Source: Mobula birostris
Taxonomy: Eukaryota
Assembly (NCBI RefSeq): GCF_030028105.1
Contig: NC_092376.1
Coordinates: 155,216,212 to 155,280,211, forward strand
Direction: 5' to 3'
DNA: 64,000 nt
A program made the position numbers and the translations under genes. Under the pieces are notes generated by a model. The model saw nothing but the letters and a program-made list of their open reading frames with translations. It was not told where the DNA came from and searched no databases. This document shows positions 10,860-45,296 of the stretch, piece after piece (within the stretch, counting starts at the first letter, position 1; every line of letters starts with the position of its first letter).

Positions 10860-13667
10860 CAAAGTTCTCTCTAATTTTTAGTAGTCAGTGTGCGCAAAAA
10901 TCTTATGTTGTGCAAATTTTTTTCCTGTGACCAAAGTATGTGCGCATTGAATGCACATCGTACAGTTTATGTAGGTTGACAAAATATTTGACATACATAT
11001 TTGCACAGAATAACAACAAAATAACATACATATTTAAGTCACTCAGTTATTTTTTCTCTTCCGTCTTTGGTATTTACCCATTCTTTGTAAACTCTATCTA
11101 GACTAATAGGACTTCCATCCAATTGATAGCTTTTGATTCTCATCAACATATCCAAATGACATTCACCTAAATGGTTTCTCAGCTTGTTTTTGAGTTGATT
11201 CATTAGGCTAAAACCTCGCTCACAGTCCGCACTAGACGCAAGAAAGGTTCCTCCAATGTCCATCAACTATGCAAGGTCATAAAACTGTTCATTTTGAAGT
11301 ACAAATGCCACCATTTGAGCAAAGTTTGAAATCAGTTTGGATTTAATTTTTTCTTGCACGGACAATTTGAAATCATTAAACCGTCTAACCATTACAGTAT
11401 TTTCAGCTAGTAAATCATGATATTTTAGAGCTTTTGTATACCGTCCAAATGCAATTTACTTGCCAAATAACACTTCAAAAAGTCAGGTTTCCAAATGGCA
11501 GCAACTTTCGCATCACGACAATACAAACAGATATAGTTGAAGTCAGAAGTTTACATACTCCTTAGCCAGATACATTTAACTCAGCTTTTCACAATTCCTG
11601 ACATTTAATCCTAGAAAACATCCCCTGTTCTAGGTCAGTTAGGATCACTACTTTATTTTAAGAATGTGAAATGTCAGGATAATAGTAGAGAGAATAATTT
11701 ATTTCGGCTTTTATTTCTTTCATCACTTTCCCAGTGGGTCAGAAGTTTACATACACTTTGTTAGTATTTGGTAGCACTGCCTTTAAATTGTTTAACTTGG
11801 GTCAAACATTTTGGGTAGCCTTCCACAAGCTTCTCAGAGTAAGTTGCTGGAATTTTGTTCCATTCCTCCAGACAGAACTGATGTAACTGAATCAGATTTG
11901 TAGGCCTCCTCGCTCGCACATGCTTTTTCAGTTCTGCCCACAAATTTTCTATCGGATTGAGGTCAGAAAATGATGTCAAGTCTTGTTCATCCTTGGGAGC
12001 AATTTTCAAATGCCTGAAGGTACCACATTCATCTGTACAAACAATAGTACGCAAGTATAAACAACATGTGACCACATAGCCGTCATACCGCTCAGGAAGG
12101 AGACACATTCTGTCTGCTAATGATGAACGTATTTTGGTGCAAAAAGTGTAAATCAATCCCAGAACAACAGCAAAGAACCTTGTGAAGATGCTGGAGGAAA
12201 CAGGTAGACAAGTATCTATATCCACAGTAAAAAGAGTCCTATATCGACATAACCTGAAAGGCTGCTCAGCAAGGAAGAAGCCACTGCTCCAAAACCGCCA
12301 TAAAAAGCCAGACAATAGTTTGCAAGTGCACATGGGGACAAAAATCTTACTTTTTGGAGAAATGTCCTCTGGTCTGATGAAACAATAAGTGAACTGTTTG
12401 GCCATAATGACCATCATTATGTTTGGAGGAAAAAGGGTGAGGCTTGCAAGCCGAAGAACACCATCCCAACCGTGAATCATGAGGGTGGCAGCATCATACT
12501 GTAGGGGTGCTTTGCTGCAGGAAGGACTGGTGCACTTCACAAAATAGATGGCATCATGAGGAAGGAAAATTATGTGGATATATTGAAGCAACATCTCAAG
12601 ACAGCAGCCAGGAAGTTAAAGCTCAGTCGCAAATGTATACCTCCAAAGTTGTGGCAAAATTGCTTAAGGACAACAAAGTCAAGGTATTGGAGTGGCCATC
12701 ACAAAGCCCTGACCTCAATCTGATAGAATATTTGTGGGCAGAATTGAAAAAGCACGTGCGAGCAAGGAGGCCTACAAACCTGACTCAGTTACACCAGTTA
12801 TGTCTGGAGGAATGGAACAAAATTCCAGCAACTTACTGTGAGAAGCTTGTGGAAGGCTACCCAAAATGTTTGACCCAAGTTGAACAACTTAAAAGCAATG
12901 CTACCAAATACTAACTAAGTGAATGTGAACTTCTGACCCACTGGGAAAGTGATGAAAGAAATAAAAGCTGAAATAAATCATTCTCCCTACTATTATTCTG
13001 ACATTTCGCATTCTTAAAATAAAGTAGTGATCCTAACTGACCTAAGACAGAGAATGTTTTCTAGGATTAAATGTCAGGAATTGTGAAAAGCTGAGTTTAA
13101 ATGTATTTGGCTAAGGTGTATGTAAACTTCTGATTTCATCTGTAACTCCAGTTTCTGAATCATACATAAATATTTCTTGTAGCTGAATGTTCATGACCTC
13201 ATGAGCTTTCAGTGTAGCAGTTTCTACTATTTTGTTAAGCCATTCAACTTTAAACAAATTTGCAGTTCTTTTGCGCTTCACACCCTTCACTTCTTTCGAA
13301 TTCAACATTTTGAATCAATATTTTTTTTCAATAAAAACTTAGTAAGCTATCTACAAGATTTGAAACAGATGTTTGTAAACTTTACGATATGAACGCTGTC
13401 CGCCAAAGATGGCTGCCGCCGCGATGCAGCTTTACAAACCGGAACAGGAAAGGGGAGGTGACGTAAACTAGTGACGTGCATTGTGGTATTTGAAAAAAAC
13501 GACTAACTAGTTAACAGAAGTATTTAGCTAAAAGATTATTTTCAATAAGTATAATTATTAATTACTACAATATCTTAGGTAACTAACCTTTTGTGCGCAC
13601 ATTAATTTCCTTTGTACACTGGTTGAAAAACGTGTGTGCACACGCACACAGCTTAGAGGGAACATAG
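10860..13667 (-). mobile_element. Non-autonomous hAT transposon, internally deleted, host of the Tc1 insertion
   Basis: TIRs CAAAGTTCTCTCTAA and TTAGAGGGAACATAG; 8-bp TSD CTCCAGTC (10852-10859) / CTCCAGCC (13668-13675); N-terminal zinc-finger remnant joined to a hAT dimerisation domain (SSADCERGFSLMNQLKNKLRN, ORF 11039-11266). Confidence 0.9.
11534..13142 (+). mobile_element. Sleeping Beauty-like Tc1 transposon (IR/DR type), defective, with two right ends
   Basis: TA TSD at 11532-11533 and 13143-13144; ends (C)AGTTGAAGTCAGAAGTTTACATAC; transposase remnant SSLGAI...KMLEETG...WSDET...WPSQSPDLN...NATKY* with stops and a deletion of the DNDPK catalytic segment near 12635. Confidence 0.95.
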
Positions 13668-15288
13668 CTCCAGCCCATAAACATTTTCTTATTTTTATCA
13701 TCATTAATCATGGAATAAACAAAGGTCTACTATATCATTCAGATGACATAACAGTAACAGCACCACACAATAATTAGGTCAATGTAGATGCTTTAAGACA
13801 TTTCATGTCAGCTATAGTTACAAACATCCTTGTTCATTTTAAAATATAAATTCTATATTTATATAAAAGCTGGTGTATACCTTTTGATGTACCTCAGTGT
13901 TTTTTGATCATAACAATTTATTTGGTTGATGTGCTCCAACAGAAATCCCGTGCATATTTTCCGTCTATATTTTGTACACCCTCAAATTACACTGCTTAAT
14001 AATTAGGTTGGACACTTACTGATTGGATAAAACTACACGTCGATTATTCTGCTATCTCATGGTGTTTGATTGTTAATCCAAATATACATTTAACCTGAAC
14101 ACACCATCCATAATTTAAACAATAATTAAAGTCAAATTTCATCTCCAAAATTAGCAGATACCGGAAAGTGAACCAATTTATTACAACAGCCTGAAAATAA
14201 GGCTGGCAGTTCTGCATTTGGAAGATTAATGGGAATTGTCATCAGTGACAAATTAACTAGTCTTTTTTAGATCTATTTCTTTATTCATCTCTTTTTTCCA
14301 AAAGCTTGACTTCATCATCTGTTGCCTTGGGGCAGGAGTTCTGTAGTCCTATCACTCAGTCCCTTGCCAGATCCTAGCAGGATGCAGGAAAAGCCTGCAT
14401 AGGATGTGACAGCTGTCCCTGGAGAAATCCTGCCGTGACCCAGCAATTAGAGGAGCAGTCGCTCAGGCACTTAGTGAAGCCATCTGTCCTACTAGGTGAC
14501 ATTGAATTGAACACAAATTGTACTCACTTTCTTGTTTGTTTACACAGGGAAGGGTGAGAAAAAATGGCATTGTTAGAAATAAAATAAGTGTATGGGCATT
14601 TAAGTAGAGAGAAATTTGCTTAATAATTCAATTTCTTCATGTAAAATCTACGTTGTATTAAGCATTTAGGAAAGATTTCTGAAGCTGCAGTACTTTGGCT
14701 ATGAAATAAACATATAACCTTCCAAAATTCTGAAAATCAGTGAATCCGAAATAACCACAGAAAATTCTGGAGATACTCAGCAAGTCAGGCAGCAGCTGTG
14801 GAAAGACAAACCAGGTCAACAAACTTTTCAAAATTTAACTGGGGAAATTTGTTGAGCAATTGTTATTGAATGTGTGTTTTTACAGTATATATAAACAATA
14901 ACAATTGTGGCTTAAAAGTGCAGTCAGAATTCTGGTTTTAAATGGTCAAAATAACATGCCATGTTATTTTATTTCTACCAGGGAAAAATGACTAGCCAAC
15001 TTGTAAAAACTCAGAGGTAACTATTCTATGACTTTGTGAGGGAGAAATTTGTCTTTGGCTGCTGATACTAAACACCTGCATAAGTAATGGTTACTACTTG
15101 TATTTTCCTCTACATATTTTGTTTCCTTGACTTCAACAGAACAAACATGAATAAAACTGACATTAATTATTCTTGTGGCAGTTAGGACCAGCAACCAAAG
15201 ATAAATTTCTCCATCATGAGAACACCTAATGAGTAACCAAGGCAGAGAAGACAGATTTAGCTGTCATTCCATGCTGTGTTATGTAATC

Positions 15289-15495
15289 AACACACATCAA
15301 AGTTGCTGGTGAACGCAGCAGGCCAGGCAGCATCTCTAGGAAGAGGTACAGTCGCCGACAGTCAGTCCTGACGAAGGGTCTCCGCCTGAAACGTCGACTG
15401 TACCTCTTCCGAGAGATGCTGCCTGGCCTGCTGCGTTCACCAGCAACTTTGATGTGTGTTGCTTGAATTTCCAGCATCTGCAGAATTCCTGTTGT
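15289..15495 (+). mobile_element. Penelope-like mini-insertion: 67-bp inverted repeat around a hammerhead motif plus 34-bp tail
   Basis: Arms 15288-15354 and 15395-15461 are complementary at 66/67 positions; 15-bp TSD ctgtg(t/c)tatgtaatc at 15274-15288 and 15496-15510. Confidence 0.92.
15363..15400 (+). ncRNA. Minimal type-I hammerhead ribozyme motif, intact core
   Basis: cagtc-CTGACGA-agg(gtctccg)cct-GAAA-cgTC^-gactg: 5-bp stem I, 3-bp stem II, palindromic ACGT in place of stem III. Confidence 0.8.
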
Positions 15496-18091
15496 CTGTG
15501 CTATGTAATCGCAAGTTAGATATTAGTAGAGATTTCACAATTCATTTTAATGCCACTGATTTAGATGAAATGTTTTTGTTCTTAATTATTGTCTACTAAC
15601 TGTTCAGGGAAGCTCTCACTCATGATATTGTGTATAGACAGGCTCTTGGTGAGCTCTAAAACCTTCTCTCGTCAAACATAGGGCATGAAGAGCTGAGCTT
15701 GAATCATGGGGAATTGGCCAGGGTGCCAGAGGTTCTCCAATGACTGTGATACCATCCCCTGTGAATGAAGAAAGAGAACTAATAACAAAAAGAAATTACA
15801 TTTCCTTCTGAAAACAGCAGGGCATGGTTACAGCTTTATTCTGGTTTTGCACAAGGCAAGGAGCAACATGTTCAGCGATTCTATTTCAGAATATAGTTTA
15901 TTTTAATATCAGCTAGCAACCAGAATTTGCCTCTGATGTATTCTTGATGTCATCATGCACCCAGTGTGCTTTCTTCTTATTAAAATGGGGAATAAAATAG
16001 GCTGATAGTGGCAATATGCGTATAATTTTGCAGTTTTCATCCTGCGTTCTAGATTGAACACTGACTCAAAGGCAAAAGTCAAAGTCAAAGTATATAAGTT
16101 TTATGTTACCATATTCTACCTCGTGATTCACTTACTTACAGGCAGTGACAAGAAAGAAAAAAAACTCAGAACATCTAATTTAGAGTACAATTTACATTCC
16201 TCTGAAAGTTAGTTATTAACTGCCTAAATTTAAAGCAAATGTAATGATTTCCCTTCACTTTATATTGGAAATGCAAGACAAGTGGAAATAAAAAAGAACT
16301 CAAAATGATTTTTTTATTAAGAGAGAAATTGATTTATAATTACCTTCAATTTAACTTGATTTTTCTTCTCCAAGAAGGGGAAAGGATTGGAAGTACTTAA
16401 GTATTGGTCAATTATACAGTTGCTGTGATAGAATTTCATTGGAAAACTAATTACTAAATGTGATCGAGGACTTCACCTGTTAATCCAGAGATTCATGAGC
16501 TAGTTTATGTGTCCGCAATTAACACAATGAATCAACACATGGCCGCACAACAACATGCAGCTCACTTCTGGTCACTTCTTCAGAATTCATTTGCACATGC
16601 AAGGCAGAAGGTGATTATGGGCTCTTCAAGTTGAAATTGGCTGTCAACAATAAAGAGTTTGCTTAAACAAAATGGGAAGGGAGCCTGCAACGTATATAAC
16701 CTAGCGCTGGCAACCACCTGCAGGTTGGCATCTTGTAGGTGAAAAAACAATTCCTCTATAGAGGTTGTTCCTGTGTGCACTCTAAAACCATTCCATCCTC
16801 CCAACCAGCACAAGTGCAGCATTGCCACCCTCAACATCACAACTCAGTTCCAAAGTTGATCCAACTCTGTTCCTCCCTCACTTGGCCCCAGTACCAGAAG
16901 CATACACCCTTACCAATCCCAGCTATTTACCATGCCACCACCGCCAACCACCATTAATGACCATCTTTCAAACACCCGGCTCTCCAGTTCCTGCCTTGTA
17001 TTTCCAGACCTTTTGTTTATTGAATTGAAGAGCAAGCAGAGGAAAGGACTTTGCATATATCAAGACTTTCTAGCACATTGTATGTACAAAACAAATTTAA
17101 TGCATTCTGCGACACCAAACCTTGGCATAAAGCATGCTTTGATTCACTATACTTCACATATTGAATGCATCTTTATCTGCACTATACAATTGCTGGGCCC
17201 CAACAGTGTGCGATGAACATAATAACATAATAAGTCATAACTGTCTTTACTTTTTATACTGTATTTCGATCACCTGAAATGTAAGGTTTTGAAAATAATA
17301 TTTTCTTGCACTTTAAATATTACTTTCTTCAATGTAAAGTGAAGAGTACATTATCATACTGCGATACCAACTTTAAGAGGTAACTGGAATTAACAGGATA
17401 GTTTGCAGTTTTCTTGTGTCCAGACACTCAAGTTTTAAGATTCCATTGAGAGAAATGAGGTATGGACAATTAAATCTGGACACACAGGGAGCTGCAGATC
17501 ATCTGATAACTCAAAATATTTTATCCTCAATAACACAAATGGGAAAAATTAAGATTATATTAGATATTCTCCTTATAGAATCTTGGATGAAGAATTTAAG
17601 TAAATGTATGATAAAAGTAGATTAAACTATAAAATCTAAATGAGACATACATTAAAATTATTCCAGATTAATTCTATGTAACTTGAACATTATCTCTTCT
17701 CTTGGTACATCTGTTCTGTGTTGCTGTTAACTCCAAGAACTTTCCATTAAAAAATACCATAGAGTGAGCAAAACAACACTTGGCTTTACATTCAAAAAGG
17801 CATAAAAGGAAAGTTACAATTTTGAATAATTTATTTTCTCAGGCCAGTGAATTGAATGTATTTCATTTTAAAATGCTTTAATTTAGTTCATCACCTGCTA
17901 TTGCTACCATTTCAATGGAGTGGTCCATCACGAGAAACTTCATTAGAATTATTAGGATACAATTCACTTGGCAAGGTTTTTCTGTTCATTAGAGCCAAGA
18001 AATGTTTCATCCCACTAAATTGACAGATTGAAACTGTGATCTGAAGTTTGAAAGAGCAATATTTCTGATTCCTGGGCAGAGTAAAACTGGA

Positions 18092-18308
18092 GTAAGTCAC
18101 ACAAAGTGCTGGAGGAACTTAGCAGGTCAGGCAACATCTATGGAAATGAATAAACAGTTGATGTTTAGGACCAAGACCCTTCATCTGGACTGGAAAGGAA
18201 GAGGGTAGATGCCAGAATATGTTTATTCATTTCCATCGATGCTTCCTGATCTGCTGAGTTCCACCAGCATTTTGCTCTGGAGGTCCAGCATCTACAGAAT
18301 TTCATGTT
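18092..18308 (+). mobile_element. Penelope-like inverted mini-insertion, older subfamily
   Basis: Inverted terminal-repeat arms; 15-bp TSD ca(g/c)agtaaaactgga at 18077-18091 and 18309-18323; decayed hammerhead on the minus strand at ~18155-18192. Confidence 0.85.
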
Positions 18309-20057
18309 CACAGTAAAACTGGAAATGGATTACCAATCACAGTAAAATCAGAAATATACTGTATACCCCCAATGTTTGATGTTATTGGAATCAATCATGT
18401 AATTTTGCAGAAAATGCATTTCATTGATCAAATGTTGGAAACAGTGGGATTGGGATTCAGTGGAGTGTAGATTTCACTATTCTCACCAAACAAGTGGGGA
18501 AGCAAATAGTTTGTTAGATTTTGCTTTGGAAGTACTTGAGTATGATGTCTCACTGTATATCTCAGCACTTTCACATGCTTCATCAACAGCTTCCCTTTCT
18601 TTATTAGGTAAGAAGTGGAGATATTTGTAAACTGCTCAAAAAAATGAAGCAACTTAAGAAAGCATGCAGTAAAAGATGGATAAAACACAGACTTTGTCTA
18701 GTGATTATCAAGTTACATTCATGATTTACAAGTATCAGACAATAATCTCTTCCAGCATGAGGAAGATAACCACTATCCTCTTAACAATGAATGTCTTTCA
18801 TTAATAATGCATTTCAACACACTGTCAACCCTAGCATAATCACTTAAGGGAAACTGTAACACATTATCCTTGACCTGGCATATAGATGTACAGATTTGAC
18901 CAGATTTGTTTCACCATCATGCTTTGGGAATTTAAAATCCTCCAAGCACACAGATTGAAGAACAACTAGATGCAAGCTTCACACAAGATAATTCTTAAGC
19001 TGATTAACAGGGGGTCTCTGTGTATTGTTATTAAAATACTGAATTGGACAGAAAACAGATTTCAGGACTCTGGAAAAAGTATTTATATTGCAATTGCAAT
19101 TATATTTTTAGAACAAATTACACTACTACTTGGGATCTGGGATCATCATCAAGCTGACTGAAAGATAGGTTTGCACATTTTAAGAAATCTATTCTAAAGA
19201 ACATCGAAAAAGTCTGATTAAGATTAGTTTGTTGATAATTTTCTCCCAAAAATCCTGCAGTTTTGTTCATGAATAATATTACTTAAAAGTGGACTGAATT
19301 GATAACCTGTCCACTGCCTGACACATTAGCATCATTGAGACAAGATCAGAAAAGCAAAGATGTCTAAACTGGCTTAAAAAAATCATCAAGGACATTAAGA
19401 ATGTATGTGAAGTTTTAAGAAATAAGGTGACATTGAAACTGATTGACAGATTCGGATGAAAAAAAATCAATAGTTAGTAACCATTTAAAAAATGCATGTA
19501 CTTCCATATTTGAGAATATATGTTAAGCTACATCGTTCTGTGGGCTACAACGCTTTAAACGTGTTGTAAAATTGTGAATTACTACTGCTCTTTTAAATTT
19601 CAAAAATGTTTTACTTTTACCCCACCAGTGTGATATTTCAAAATATGGTCTCAACAAATTAAAACAGCCCAAATAAATGTAACCAGGTGACCACTGAATA
19701 CCATTTCCTATTGTTAACATGCACTTATGTATTCACCTGGTAGTCCTAGTTACCTGTGTCTTTAAGAGAAAGCGATGACATCATTATACACATGTGGAGC
19801 AGATGAGTTATAATGTTCTAGAAAGAACATCGAGTACTGGTTGTATGGTGAGGAAAGATTTTCATGAGCAAGGTATCAGCACTGGATAACATGATTGTGC
19901 AAGGTTCCTTAACGGCCTCGTAGCATGAACAAGGAGAACTCGTTTCAGGGTCTAGCCAATACATATTTGGAAGTTAAGCTGTGTGTGTGCCAAAAATTGC
20001 TGCTACCATATTGGTTTTCTATATTTTGTTCTATTTATTTTCATATTGTGTCCAATA

Positions 20058-27024: not shown

Positions 27025-27474
27025 ACAACAGGAATTCTGCAGATGCTGGAAATTCAAGCAACACACATAAAAGTTGCTGGTGAACGCAGCAGGGCAGGCA
27101 GCATCTCTAGGAAGAGGTGCAGTCGACATTTCAGGCCGAGACCCTTCGTCAGGACTAACTGAAGGAAAAGTGAGTAAGGGATTTGAAAGTTGGAGGGGGA
27201 GGGGGAGATCCAAAATGATAGGAGAAGACAGGAGGGGGAGGGATGGAGCCAAGAGCTGGATGGGTGATTGGCAAAGGGGATATGAGAGGATCATGGGACA
27301 GGAGGTTCGGGAAGAAAGACAAGGCGGGGGGGGACCCAGAGGATGGGCAAGGGGTATATTCAGAGGGACAGAGGGAGAAAAAGGAGAGTGAGAGAAAGAA
27401 TGTGTGTATAAAAATAAGTAACAGATGGGGTACGAGGGGGAGGTGGGGCATTAGCGGAAGTTAGAGAAGACGAT
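27025..27474 (-). mobile_element. Young Penelope-like element 3' end (ORF stop, UTR, terminal repeat, tail)
   Basis: Reverse complement starts ...FSNFR*; terminal repeat nearly identical to the 15289 copy. Confidence 0.9.
27120..27157 (-). ncRNA. Minimal hammerhead motif with ACGT palindrome mutated to ATGT
   Basis: tagtc-CTGACGA-agggtctcggcct-GAAA-tgTC-gactg. Confidence 0.7.
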
Positions 27475-38544: not shown

Positions 38545-38738
38545 ACAAGAGATTCTGCAGATGCTGGAAATCCATAACATTCTGGAGAGACTCAGCAGGT
38601 CAGGTATCATCTATGCAAAGAAATAAACAGTCTATGTTTCAGGCCAGGATGACCACTGTTTATACTTTCCATGGTTGCTGCCTGACCTGCTGAGTTCCTA
38701 CAGCATTTTGAATATGTTGCTTTGGATTTCCAGCATCC
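38545..38738. mobile_element. Palindromic Penelope-like terminal-repeat pair followed by a (TG/TA)n microsatellite to 38768
   Basis: GATGCTGGAAATCC...CTCAGCAGGTCAGG and CCTGACCTGCTGAG...GGATTTCCAGCATC. Confidence 0.8.
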
Positions 38739-41099
38739 GTGTGTATGTGTATATATATATATATATATCCATTTTCATGTTCTCACAGAAGAACTGATCA
38801 TTGTAGGTATAATTCTCAGTTTCCAGCCCATGTGTGTTATAATTTAATGGAGTGCAGTCTCTGTTTACACAGCTACACCTGTGATTTCAGAACTGATCAC
38901 CAAAATATTCAATAGAAGTAGTTTGAAAGCTAATTTTTGATTATATAATTTGTTCTCTAACTATATGTTTCATAAACAAGGATATTGGCTCCTAATTAAA
39001 GTTCTTCAGTTTCCAGAAAGCCGGCATCTATTGAAAAAAACTGAAGGTCGACTCTTATAATGAAATTTGTTCTCCATAAATCTTAATCTAAAAGACTTGT
39101 ATTACAGAAGTATGATAGGAATTGGATGGCACAATACATCAGCAGCATAACATATTTAAACTGTCATAAATATTTGTAAATTAGTATTGTTCAGTTTTAT
39201 TAACTAACAAATCCTCCTGAGTCGTTAATTAACTTGCTGATATTTTATTAGTTTTAGTCTTGGTTATTAAATTTCTTAATTTGAAATTTGCTTTTTTTTA
39301 AAAAAAGTAGAGGACAAGAATATGTATGCCTTTTTTAAACTATTAAGACTTGTTTTTTTTTTACCATCATAAACCTTACCATCATTGATCTGTCAATTAG
39401 GATGCAAAGACATGTGATGACAGTGAGGGGCATATTTAGAAAGAAAAAAATCATAATTTCTTTGCTAAAGAATTGACAAAGGTTTTAATTTGGATTTGAT
39501 AGTTATGTGGGTGAATCCACAAGGAGTTGAATGATGTGATCAAGCACATGTGAAAGAAGGATAATTGCTTCAGTTTCCATCAAACAACAGAAAGGATTGA
39601 GTGAAGCAGATTTTTTTCTGCTTTATCTCTTCGGGGAATGTAAGAGAAAATTGTAGAACTCTGTCAAGCAGTATTTAAAAAAACTTAAGTTGCAGGATCT
39701 TAAAAGATTGCAAAATATTACTGATTTAATCTTTTCAATATAACTTTATGAACATCCATTCAAATTTTAGAAGAAAATACTGATCGCAAGTATAAAGTGC
39801 AAACATTTGAAAGCAAAACATTGATAATTTTGTGCTGATAATAAAATACTCATCTCACTTCTGTTTAAATATTTTGAGCAACTTTACCATAGCAGAATTG
39901 GGCCATTCCATCATGACTGATCCTCTCAACCCCTTTCTTCTGCCTTCTCCCCATAAAGAAAGTGAATGCAGCACCTCATCAGATGGGCAAAATGGTAGGC
40001 ATTGGAAAGTTTGTCCCTTTTAAAAAAAAAAGAAACAGCACTCGCAGATAGCACACAGAAAAGTACACAATTTTGTGTAGGGCTTAAAGTTACATTTATT
40101 CAGTGAGGTGTCTGCTACAACACAGCTTCCTTTGTAAATTCAGGTCATTCATGGTTTTCAAGAAAGAAAATTGAATATCGTGATATGACTTGTTTTTGTC
40201 ATGAAGACAGCCTGACACTATCACAGTTAATTTACTTTTTTGTTGGTACTAGACGCAATTTAAAGGAATAGATTGCATTTTTTGGTCATTGTTGATGCTG
40301 GAGATTTGACATAATTAAGCTTGCACATTTAAACAAGTGGTTGCTTACATATTACTTAATTTTAAACAGCTGAAACATTAGAAATAAATCATGCTGAAGA
40401 TGCTTTAATATTTTCCATATTGCAGATGTAACCTACTGCATATACTGTTACGATAGTAAACATATTTCAATACAAGGAAACACATTTGCTTTTGCAAGCA
40501 CTAGTTTATGAGAGTGAATGACATTTGGTTACTTAAAATCAGAGAACTTGCATATTAACATTTCCTTGGGGACTTTTAAGAAAGGAATGCAGAATACATT
40601 CAAACACAATATTACTTCACTCATTGCATATAAAAAACATTTCACTCAGATTAGCTGCAGGGGACATCTGTTTTCCTGATTTGCTGCCAACTGTACAGAA
40701 TGTCCTTGATATTCAGAAAAAGGTTATGGGGCTTTTTTTTTAATTATGAGTAAGGTGCTTTTCTACTTTGAAGAGCATCAGTGTTTAATTCATCTCTTTT
40801 CGGCAGAAAAGTCAGAAAGTGTTTTATGTAAGAATGGCAATATTCTGTTCTGGACTACATACTGGCTGTGCTGCAACTGAGCTGTGAACATGAGGGCTAC
40901 AAGCAATTCAGAGTTAAATCAAACCTCATCATTCTATTATTAAATACCAAGAAAGTAAGATGAGCAATTGTTTACATGTGTTAAAAGACAATTAATTTTT
41001 CCATATATATTCGTATGACATTTCAAAAAACTTCTGCAAATATTTCATTGATAATTTTGATATGTAAACTCATTGCAGAACTATTCTTGCCAGTTGCCA

Positions 41100-44699: not shown

Positions 44700-45296
44700 C
44701 CCAACCAAAACGTAGACAAAGTTAATTCAAGATAAGTGGTAATGGAGAAAGCACAAACCTGGGGAAAGTAACGAGAACAACAGGAATTCTGCAGATGCTG
44801 GAAATTCAAGCAACACACATCAAAGTTGCTGGTGAATGCAGCAGGCCAGGCAGCATCTCTAGGAAGTGGTACAATCGACGTTTCAGGCCGAGACCCTTCG
44901 TCAGTAATGAGACCTTGTCAAAGACACTGAACATGCCTCAGGACTCAGTGCATTCCAGCATGAAAAAGTGGAAAAATTATGAAACCACAATCACACTGCC
45001 TCAGACAGGCCTCCCGTCTAAAGTGAATCGCTGAAGAATTAGATCATTTGTAAGAGGTTACTGTGGCACCAGCAGACACTCTGAGTGAGCTGCAGAAGTG
45101 AGTGGCTGTAACTGGAAACTAAGTTCATTGCTCCACAATCTCTAAGCCCTTGAAGAAAAAGGGTATTTTGAGAAGAGTGGCAAGGGAGAAGCCCTGACTT
45201 AAAAAAAAGGCATATCATTTTCTGTCAAGACTTGGGAAGCGTCACTTAGAAGATACCGTAAAGATGTGGAAGAAGGTCTTGTGGTCGGATGAGACA
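44700..45296 (+). mobile_element. Tc1 transposase N-terminal remnant, second Tc1 family
   Basis: Reads EKHKPGESNETLSKTLNMP...KKWKNYETTITLPQTGLPSK...MWKKVLWSDET once the 44777 insertion is removed. Confidence 0.8.
44777..44902 (-). mobile_element. Young Penelope-like terminal repeat plus tail inserted in Tc1, 5'-truncated at the hammerhead core
   Basis: Nearly identical to the 15289 and 27025 copies; TSD agtaa(c/t)gaga at 44767-44776 and 44903-44912. Confidence 0.88.

What the first reader, a model, noticed from the sequence alone, without database searches (positions are those of the whole stretch)
15274..15510. 207-bp hairpin retro-insertion with an intact minimal hammerhead ribozyme; the inverted arm ends at the predicted cleavage site
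Seen: a non-coding insertion with a 15-bp TSD, made of a 67-bp arm, a 40-nt loop containing cagtc-CTGACGA-stemII-GAAA-cgTC^gactg, the complementary arm and a 34-nt tail. The inverted arm covers C15395 (the predicted cleavage nucleotide) up to the start of the tail. Established: Penelope-like elements carry minimal type-I hammerheads that lack stem III and cleave as dimers through a palindromic tetranucleotide (here ACGT), and they often have a tail-less inverted repeat at the 5' end. Inference: the inversion boundary may record the 5' end of the ribozyme-processed RNA template. The unit could be a product of one insertion event or a member of a ribozyme-defined non-autonomous family. The long hairpin would also sequester stem I and could switch the ribozyme off.
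Basis: partly seen in the sequence, partly recalled or inferred. Interest (0 to 1): 0.8.

Follow-up and report, generated by a model that had tools for sequence, protein, structure and literature searches.

The report
Penelope fold-back insertion carrying a hammerhead
This is an ordinary short insertion left by a Penelope-like jumping gene, but one of its arms stops at the spot where its small self-cutting RNA motif would cut, and two older insertions nearby do the same, which hints that the motif really cuts in living cells.

Summary
A 207-bp non-coding insertion (15289-15495) sits between 15-bp target duplications (14/15). It has a 66-nt inverted arm, a 40-nt middle with a complete minimal hammerhead core, the sense copy and a 35-nt tail. 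A related species' contig lacks exactly 222 bp (insert plus one duplication). A closer relative carries both junctions. So it is one insertion event, not an assembly artefact.

It is a 5'-truncated end of a very abundant Penelope-like element (PLE) family: 18 profile hits in this window and tens of thousands of contigs per genome run. It shows the published PLE signature of an inverted 5' copy, a 30-40-bp tail at one end and a target duplication. Both-strand priming, shown in vitro for an anole PLE, explains the fold-back.

The interesting part is only partly supported. The short arm ends at the predicted scissile bond, ambiguous between -3, 0 and +1. Both other head-to-head insertions in the window end at +2 and +4, and one plain copy starts near +1. 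Truncated genome-wide contig joints show many other break points. Unchecked scan notes on other DNA of this genome report the same coincidence, and also arms that run through the ribozyme. Cleavage, RT stalling and chance remain open.

The parts
15274..15288 (.). left copy of the 15-bp target-site duplication
   Evidence: matches 15496-15510 at 14 of 15; the organism C contig has a single copy.
15289..15354 (-). inverted, tail-less, 5'-truncated copy (short arm). It is the antisense of 15395-15460, and its inner end lies at the predicted scissile bond.
   Evidence: 1 mismatch in 66. The left arm carries the family-consensus letter at that position (place 15411).
15355..15358 (.). 4-nt junction filler. 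Three of its letters could instead be arm sequence with one mismatch.
   Evidence: Comparison with long copy 27025-27259 puts the start of the sense copy at 15359.
15359..15495 (+). sense copy of the PLE terminal region (long arm), beginning 37 nt 5' of the scissile bond
   Evidence: about 95% identical to 27025-27161(-) and 44777-44910(-); profile hit.
15363..15400 (+). minimal type-I hammerhead: helix I 15363-67/15396-400, CUGACGA 15368-74, bulged A 15375, helix II 15376-87, GAA 15388-90, ACGU 15391-94, C17 15395
   Evidence: read. Pattern versus shuffles. No Rfam model matches. Cleavage was not tested.
15461..15495 (+). 35-nt tail, present on the long arm only
   Evidence: loose ends show two discrete 3' ends genome-wide: 15463 without tail, and 15490/15495 with tail.
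15496..15510 (.). right copy of the target-site duplication
18092..18308 (.). older hairpin insertion B. The long copy is 18092-18219 on the minus strand, without tail. The short arm is 18220-18308 on the plus strand, with tail, and starts at +4 of the predicted site. The TSD is 18077-18091 / 18309-18323 (14/15).
38548..38739 (.). older hairpin insertion C. One copy is 38548-38654 on the minus strand. The short arm starts at 38655 on the plus strand, at +2 of the predicted site. Both arms carry tail sequence, and the right end lies in a microsatellite.
14743..14816 (-). plain 5'-truncated copy whose homology starts about +1 to +5 after the predicted site
   Evidence: The profile alignment starts at position 135; I extended it by eye to about +1.
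27025..27259 (-). long copy of the young subfamily, used as reference. It extends at least 100 nt upstream of the hammerhead.
44777..44908 (-). young copy truncated at the CUGACGA box, with a 9-bp TSD (8/9)

Best explanation
The unit is a dead-on-arrival insertion made in one event by the machinery of a Penelope-like retroelement. The following points are shown. The target was cut with a 15-bp stagger. The insert consists of two copies of the element's 3'-terminal region placed head to head. One copy starts at the distal 3' end (with tail) and the other at the proximal one (no tail). The event happened after the lineage of organism C split off and before organisms A and B separated. The following steps are inferred. 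Each of the two DNA 3' ends primed reverse transcription on PLE RNA, as the anole PLE protein does on both strands in vitro. The bottom-strand cDNA read through the hammerhead and stopped 37 nt beyond the scissile bond. The top-strand cDNA ran off a template whose 5' end was the hammerhead cleavage site. Its 3' end then jumped to the end of the other cDNA, leaving 4-5 filler letters, and so made the fold-back. On this reading the short arm is a DNA record of hammerhead self-cleavage in vivo. My confidence is about 0.9 for the PLE one-event insertion, about 0.7 for both-strand priming, and about 0.4 for the cleaved-template step. The confidence figure of this field is for the whole chain.
For: One event. 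The organism C contig (record 25) lies on 14796-15279 and 15502-15738 with adjacent record positions 270 and 269, so it skips 222 bp, which is 207 plus 15. Organism B contigs cross 14700-15317 and 15473-16100.

Family. There are two copies of about 95% identity and about ten older ones in the window and 18 profile hits. Contigs laid were 51,678 (X1), 85,995 (X5), 10,934 (X9) and 5,804 (X15).

PLE signature. PMC8557442 (passages) describes an inverted 5'-truncated copy adjacent at the 5' end and a 30-40-bp tail at one end. [quoted passage not shown]

Two priming events rather than snap-back. The arms differ in the tail: A has it on the long arm only, B on the short arm only, C on both. PMC11167929 (passages) reports that the anole protein cleaves and extends both strands and starts at two sites that bracket the tail. 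In that element the RT start lies 111-118 nt into the ORF and the HHR cut 26 nt into it, which is the same geometry as here (about 65 and 100 nt).

Cleaved template. One search tested all 18 profile hits for an inverted partner and found 3 head-to-head pairs. Their short arms start at 0 (or -3/+1), +2 and +4. One of 12 plain copies starts at about +1. For the two cases found after the hypothesis was formed, P(2 of 2) is 0.008 for a 5-nt window in 55 possible positions. Four of 18 5' ends fall in an 8-nt window, where 0.74 are expected, P=0.005.
Against: The arm end is ambiguous by 4 nt in the focal copy, and the three cases scatter over 0 to +4 instead of all sitting at +1. The sample is tiny and the hypothesis was formed on one of the three cases.

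One search lists 330 kinds of joints, of which 15 are shown. The short-arm ends of those 15, mirrored onto the sense copy, lie between +4 and +43. No loose end at 15395/15396 is among the 24 of 1,215 loose ends shown. Break points are therefore clearly not confined to the cleavage site, and I could not see the full distribution.

[quoted passage not shown] PMC4209133 reports low in-vitro activity of minimal HHRs, and dual min-HHRs on opposite strands 100-700 bp apart in Schistosoma, which means arms that pass the ribozyme. Unchecked scan notes on this genome describe the same.

The predicted minimum-energy fold of the monomer is not the hammerhead fold: -14.3 versus -9.2 kcal/mol.
Confidence: 0.4

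Rival explanations
1. This is the same both-strand PLE insertion, but the short cDNA ended because reverse transcriptase stalled at the folded, perhaps dimeric or protein-bound, hammerhead. The stall would occur while entering helix I or the three-way junction, with no RNA cleavage.
For: The ends at 0, +2 and +4 all lie inside the 3' strand of helix I (+1 to +5). That is what a structural stop would give, and it explains the scatter better than an exact run-off. PMC11167929 (passage) calls the anole HHR protein-assisted and found no reads ending at the site.
Against: Helix I is only 5 bp. The hammerhead fold is not the predicted minimum. The long arms of the same insertions read straight through the motif.
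Confidence: 0.25
2. The coincidence is chance. Inner ends of inverted PLE arms are spread broadly, and three of them in this window happen to lie near the site.
For: One search shows many inversion joints elsewhere along the element, with mirrored ends from +4 to +43 in the 15 rows shown. Unchecked scan notes describe inverted arms of 576 and 745 nt, and arms with a hammerhead on each strand. The case was found post hoc, and n=3.
Against: P(2 of 2) is 0.008 to 0.02 for the two cases found afterwards. A plain copy also starts there. Four unchecked scan notes from other pieces of the genome report junctions at or within the hammerhead.
Confidence: 0.2
3. The hairpin itself is a mobile, non-autonomous unit: a ribozyme-defined family that is copied as a hairpin.
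For: Contigs reading A at 15355 (14 in X1, 27 in X5) could be further copies of a similar junction.
Against: The three hairpins in the window differ in long-arm start (37, 60 and about 17-22 nt 5' of the site), in filler and in tail placement. The arms were near-identical at insertion, 1/66 in the young copy and 87% and 78% in the older ones, as expected if each was made anew. Plain copies far outnumber hairpins, 12 to 3 among the window's units.
Confidence: 0.03
4. The arm arose by snap-back self-priming of a single cDNA, or the structure is an assembly or sequencing artefact.
For: An unchecked scan note reads similar insertions as snap-back. Inverted chimeras are a known long-read artefact (recalled).
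Against: A snap-back copy would reproduce the other arm's 3' end, but the tail is present on one arm only in A and B. Independent contigs of organism B carry both junctions, and organism C shows the clean empty site.
Confidence: 0.02

Closest known systems
Penelope-like element insertions (Penelope/Poseidon type) with pseudo-LTR, inverted 5'-truncated copy and 30-40-bp tail
   Same: It shares 5' truncation, an adjacent inverted 5'-truncated copy, a tail at one end only, a target duplication and a hammerhead in the terminal repeat (PMC8557442 passages; PMC11167929 passages).
   Different: This is a miniature case of 207 bp with no ORF. The published descriptions I read do not relate the inner end of the inverted copy to the ribozyme's scissile bond.
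Minimal hammerhead ribozymes of metazoan PLEs (Cervera and De la Pena 2014, PMC4209133)
   Same: It is type I with no helix III, a palindromic tetranucleotide (ACGU) for dimer formation, a short helix I (5 bp), and a nucleotide between A9 and 10.1.
   Different: Position 10.1-11.1 is G.U (or A-U in the other register) instead of the highly conserved G-C. Helix II has only 4 pairs, against 6-8 in the Schistosoma and Drosophila examples described in the text.
R2 elements, whose HDV-like ribozyme sets the RNA 5' end and hence the 5' junction (PMC3774820, abstract in the search listing only)
   Same: A self-cleaving ribozyme defines the 5' end of the RNA template, and that end is visible in the DNA junction. 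This is the same logic as the proposal here.
   Different: R2 uses a different ribozyme class that sits at the element's 5' end, so cleavage yields the full-length template. Here cleavage would leave only a 65-100-nt stub, so the record is an abortive arm.
L1 twin-priming inversions (recalled, not looked up)
   Same: The second DNA end primes reverse transcription and produces an inverted segment within one target duplication.
   Different: In twin priming the inverted part is a different, upstream part of the same RNA. Here the two arms are duplicates of the same 3' region, each starting at a regular PLE start site.
Animal non-LTR retrozymes (PMC7229834 abstract in listing; bioRxiv 10.64898/2026.07.22.740005 abstract and two passages)
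   Same: They are hammerhead-bearing non-autonomous sequences derived from PLE termini.
   Different: Retrozymes are tandem arrays processed into circular RNAs. The copies here are dispersed single insertions, with none in tandem among the 18 profile hits.

Membership tests
Penelope-like element insertion | Inverted 5'-truncated copy immediately adjacent to the 5' end of a 5'-truncated copy | tested here: met
   15289-15354 is the reverse complement of 15395-15460
Penelope-like element insertion | Optional 30-40-bp tail, often at one end only, reflecting two reverse-transcription start sites | tested here: met
   The 35-nt tail is on one arm. Genome-wide contig ends fall at 15463 and at 15490/15495.
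Penelope-like element insertion | Target-site duplication and an empty site in a relative | tested here: met
   14/15; the organism C contig skips 222 bp
Penelope-like element insertion | Link to an ORF with a telomerase-like RT and a GIY-YIG endonuclease | tested here: inconclusive
   There is no such ORF in the window. Of 4 ORFs of 150 aa or more, none has an RT or GIY-YIG hit. The autonomous partner elsewhere in the genome could not be reached. Scan notes that mention GIY-YIG arms are unchecked.
Hammerhead ribozyme, minimal type I | Conserved core C3-A9, G12-A14, A15.1-U16.1, H17 | tested here: met
   Read. The pattern gives 2 matches against 0 in 100 shuffles.
Hammerhead ribozyme, minimal type I | Helices I and II flanking the core, and a palindrome at 15.1-16.1 for dimeric helix III | tested here: met
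   Helix I has 5 bp, helix II has 4 pairs including 2 G.U, and ACGU is present.
Hammerhead ribozyme, minimal type I | G10.1-C11.1 pair | tested here: not met
   It is G15376.U15387 here, and also in the family copies.
Hammerhead ribozyme, minimal type I | Match to a curated covariance model | tested here: not met
   There were 0 matches at gathering score in the window. No hammerhead model matched at E up to 10 in 15200-15600. That the Rfam models expect a helix III is my recollection.
Hammerhead ribozyme, minimal type I | Self-cleavage after C17 | not testable with these tools
   This needs transcription and cleavage assays. All runs were contigs, which cannot show RNA ends.
Non-LTR retrozyme | Head-to-tail tandem units with one hammerhead each | tested here: not met
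   The 18 profile hits are dispersed or head to head, and none is in tandem.
L1-type twin priming | The inverted segment is a different, more 5' part of the template | tested here: not met
   The arms are duplicates of the same 66 nt.
MITE or microRNA hairpin | Family of hairpin units with fixed terminal inverted repeats, or a match to a miRNA family | tested here: not met
   Plain single-arm copies dominate. miRNA models score 23-36 bits against gathering scores of 65-110.

The most novel reading that the evidence does not exclude
In this genome the short inverted arms and stubs of PLE insertions are run-off cDNAs made on hammerhead-cleaved RNA. Their inner ends would then form a genome-wide fossil record of hammerhead self-cleavage in vivo. 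They would also show that the ribozyme acts within the integration complex, possibly as a dimer that holds the two templates of a both-strand priming event together. This would give the PLE hammerhead a first in-vivo read-out that needs only an assembled genome.
Probability: 0.35. Interest if true: 0.7.

Novelty: new member of a known kind. Interest (0 to 1): 0.45.

Why it matters
The function of hammerheads in PLEs is an acknowledged open question. PMC8557442 (passage) says HHR function in endonuclease-bearing PLEs is still unclear. PMC11167929 (passages) found that cleavage was not needed for insertion in vitro, and that no RNA reads ended at the site. If the inner ends of inverted arms pile up at the scissile bond, existing assemblies of this repeat-rich genome, with tens of thousands of copies, would show that cleavage happens in vivo and at what stage. 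If they do not pile up, the insertion is just one more PLE fold-back. The empty-site and occupied-site comparison between three organisms also dates this insertion. It shows cleanly that an inverted arm, the main copy, the tail and the target duplication arise in a single event.

Tried and rejected
Rfam. There was no hammerhead hit at gathering score in the window, and none at E up to 10 around the site. The six weak hits are miRNA-precursor models matching the long hairpin, all far below their gathering scores, so the miRNA reading was dropped.

Autonomous partner. The window has four ORFs of 150 aa or more. Pfam gave only a sub-threshold DDE_3 hit on one of them, which belongs to a different transposon, and no RT or GIY-YIG.

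More copies from public collections. One scan of metagenome contigs with a 19-letter pattern from the conserved core gave 114 stretches. The family profile found only one 28-nt weak hit (E 4.6e-4) among all 114. These were chance matches and were of no use.

Genome-wide break-point table. Read laying returned contigs only. It showed 15 of 330 joints and 24 of 1,215 loose ends, so enrichment at the site could not be computed.

Models rejected.
- Snap-back self-priming was rejected because the tail sits on one arm only.
- Microhomology annealing of the two cDNA ends through the helix I complement was considered. The 6-nt repeat 15348-15353 / 15358-15363 would predict one copy of it at the joint, but two copies with 4 letters between them are seen.
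- Central deletion of a longer palindrome was rejected because it is not tied to the ribozyme.
- Twin priming was rejected because the arms are duplicates.

Literature. I made four valid searches and in-paper searches or readings. I found no statement that inverted-arm ends coincide with the cleavage site. That is not proof of absence. Supplementary files were not seen: the figures S2-S7 of PMC4209133 and S1-S2 of PMC11167929 show alignments and read ends that may bear on this. Subscription papers on Penelope structure are not in the library.

The organism was not identified. My impression that the repeat looks like one from cartilaginous fishes is recollection only.
Full report
WHAT IS THERE. 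A 15-nt direct repeat, 15274-15288 and 15496-15510 (14 of 15 identical), brackets a 207-bp insert, 15289-15495. Positions 15289-15354 are the reverse complement of 15395-15460, with one mismatch in 66. Between them lie 40 nt (15355-15394), and after the right arm come 35 nt with no partner (15461-15495).

The middle and the start of the right arm spell a complete minimal hammerhead. Helix I is 15363-15367 with 15396-15400. The CUGACGA box is 15368-15374, followed by an extra A. Helix II has four pairs (15376-79 with 15384-87) and a 4-nt loop. Then come GAA, the palindrome ACGU, and C17 at 15395. The core pattern occurs twice in the window and in none of 100 shuffles. No Rfam model recognises it. 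The only weak hits are miRNA-precursor models that respond to the long hairpin.

IT IS A MEMBER OF A HUGE FAMILY. The right part (15358-15495) has two copies of about 95% identity in the window, at 27025-27161 and 44777-44910, both on the minus strand. About ten older copies are 70-81% identical. A profile built from these finds 18 hits. Copy 27025-27259 continues at least 100 nt upstream of the hammerhead. Copy 44777-44908 is cut at the CUGACGA box and has its own 9-bp duplication.

Laid on 14700-16100, public contig sets gave 51,678 pieces (run X1, organism A) and 85,995 (X5, organism B). They also gave 10,934 (X9, organism C) and 5,804 (X15, guessed RNA, organism A). All of these lie on the element, while the flanks stay at single-copy depth. 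The flanks have no contig in X15, so nothing shows that this particular copy is transcribed.

The majority letters of the family differ from the focal copy at 15383 (loop of helix II) and at 15411. At 15411 the left arm has kept the family letter.

IT IS ONE INSERTION EVENT. In one search an 815-nt contig of organism C lies on 14796-15279 and on 15502-15738 with adjacent record positions. It therefore lacks exactly 222 bp, the insert plus one copy of the duplication. Its flanks differ from the window by about 6% (29 of 484 and 15 of 237 letters).

Organism B has the insertion. One contig runs from 14700 into the left arm to 15317 (10 differences in 618). Another runs from the tail at 15473 to 16100 (6 in 628). 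The insertion is thus younger than the split from C and at least as old as the A-B split. This fits the 1-in-66 difference between the arms. An assembly artefact is excluded.

WHAT KIND OF THING. The features match published descriptions of Penelope-like elements.
- PMC8557442 (passages read) describes heavy 5' truncation. [quoted passage not shown] It also describes a 30-40-bp tail at one end only, and hammerheads in the pseudo-LTRs.
- PMC4209133 (text parts 1 and 2 read) defines the minimal hammerhead of metazoan PLEs. [quoted passage not shown] It probably acts as a dimer and has low activity in vitro.
- PMC11167929 (passages read) shows that the anole PLE protein cleaves and extends both DNA strands. 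Reverse transcription starts at two internal sites that bracket the tail. The hammerhead cut lies 26 nt into the ORF and the start sites 111-118 nt into it.

The same geometry is seen here. Contigs of the family end at 15463 (no tail) or at 15490/15495 (tail), about 65 and 100 nt after the predicted cut.

One published hallmark, the G10.1-C11.1 pair, is not met; it is G.U here. No RT or GIY-YIG ORF lies in the window, so the link to an autonomous element rests on the signature alone.

HOW THE FOLD-BACK AROSE. One search tested all 18 profile hits for an inverted partner upstream. It found three head-to-head pairs: the focal one (A), 18092-18308 (B, with a 15-bp duplication, 14/15) and 38548-38739 (C).

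The tail sits on the long arm only in A, on the short arm only in B, and on both arms in C. A cDNA that snapped back on itself would copy whatever 3' end the first arm had, so snap-back is rejected. Two separate initiations, one on each DNA end, fit both the data and the in-vitro work. The two cDNA ends must then have been joined. In A, 4-5 letters at 15355-15358 belong to neither arm. In B there is no filler.

THE COINCIDENCE WITH THE CLEAVAGE SITE. Aligning each short arm to its partner gives these starts relative to the scissile bond. A starts at 0, or at -3 with one mismatch, or at +1 if the first filler letter matches by chance. C starts at +2 and B at +4.

The ambiguity in A is made worse by a 6-nt palindrome (15393-15398) centred on the bond. 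A plain truncated copy, 14743-14816, also starts at about +1 (the last letters were judged by eye).

The 18 5' ends in the window fall as follows:
- six lie 100 nt or more upstream;
- five lie 0-9 nt upstream of the CUGANGA box;
- three are scattered, at about 60, 17-22 and 14 nt upstream;
- four lie within -3 to +4.

For the two hairpins found after the idea was formed, the chance of both falling in a 5-nt window out of 55 usable positions is 0.008. Four of 18 ends in an 8-nt window, against 0.74 expected, gives P=0.005. These numbers rest on very few cases and on a window chosen after seeing the data.

EVIDENCE AGAINST A SIMPLE RULE. The contig joints show that inverted junctions are common and varied. 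Of 330 kinds, 15 are shown, and their short-arm ends, mirrored onto the sense copy, lie between +4 and +43. One of them is a near-perfect palindrome with a 5-letter centre. No loose end at 15395/15396 is among the 24 of 1,215 shown. The listing is truncated, and joints identical to the reference are not reported, so neither enrichment nor its absence can be read from it.

PMC4209133 mentions dual hammerheads on opposite strands 100-700 bp apart in Schistosoma. PMC11167929 found that ribozyme mutants insert normally in vitro and that no RNA reads end at the site.

Earlier notes of this scan on other pieces of the same genome, all unchecked, point both ways. Four report junctions at or inside the hammerhead. 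At least four others report long inverted arms or a hammerhead on each strand. The scan has therefore seen this pattern before on other DNA, but nobody has counted it.

MOST LIKELY MECHANISM AND RIVALS. I take the insertion to be a both-strand target-primed event. One cDNA read through the ribozyme and stopped 37 nt beyond it. The other ended at the ribozyme site and then switched to the end of the first.

Three explanations remain for why it ended there. The first is run-off on hammerhead-cleaved RNA, at about 0.4. This is the same logic as the R2 ribozyme that fixes the 5' junction (PMC3774820, abstract in the listing). The second is a stall in helix I of a folded or protein-bound ribozyme, at about 0.25, which explains the 0 to +4 scatter well. 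The third is chance, at about 0.2. A hairpin-shaped mobile family and artefacts are unlikely.

A transcript of the whole unit would fold into a 66-bp duplex that buries the 3' strand of helix I (-149 kcal/mol).

VERDICT. The object is an ordinary new member of a known kind. Its value is as a clean, dated example, and as one of three local cases of a junction-at-ribozyme pattern. That pattern is cheap to test genome-wide and bears on the unresolved role of PLE hammerheads.

Noticed in passing
window 15359, 33479, 44904-44908, about 1881, about 34212; read laying place 15364: There is a second discrete class of 5' ends 0-9 nt upstream of the CUGANGA box, which gives units of about 130-137 nt (hammerhead plus terminal region). 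Five of the 18 ends in the window belong to it. Genome-wide, 165 contigs of run X5 start their match at 15364 after unrelated AT-rich DNA. It could be a transcription start in the pseudo-LTR or a preferred drop-off point.
   Followed up: partly
window 27162-27185 minus strand, and the profile consensus: Directly upstream of helix I the long copies read a polypyrimidine run followed by CAG, like a 3' splice site. PMC4209133 states that the D. virilis Penelope intron ends at the 5' end of helix I.
   Followed up: no
window 15355 (read-laying table 3): 14 contigs of X1 and 27 of X5 read A instead of C at this place, the exact complement of U16.1. They may be perfect palindromes with both arms starting at +1, or copies starting 3 nt upstream of the bond. 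The output was too truncated to tell.
   Followed up: no
window 15393-15398: The young subfamily has a 6-nt palindrome centred exactly on the scissile bond and overlapping the ACGU palindrome. It blurs any head-to-head joint made at +1 and could offer an alternative intermolecular pairing.
   Followed up: no
window 18077-18323: Hairpin insertion B has a 15-bp target duplication (14/15), the same length as the focal one. Its hammerhead core has decayed (CAGATGA, TAAA).
   Followed up: yes
window 38740-38775: Hairpin insertion C abuts a TG/TA microsatellite at its right end. PMC8557442 notes an insertion bias of PLEs for microsatellites.
   Followed up: no
window 11761-12594: A 277-aa ORF on the minus strand has a sub-threshold DDE_3 hit (E 0.0018, 18.6 bits against a cut-off of 28.6). 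It lies inside the Tc1-like transposon noted by another reader (s1-894834).
   Followed up: no
Read-laying run X15: A run guessed to be RNA holds 5,804 contigs of the family but none on the single-copy flanks of this locus. One of those contigs shows an inverted junction inside the element (loose end before 15407).
   Followed up: no
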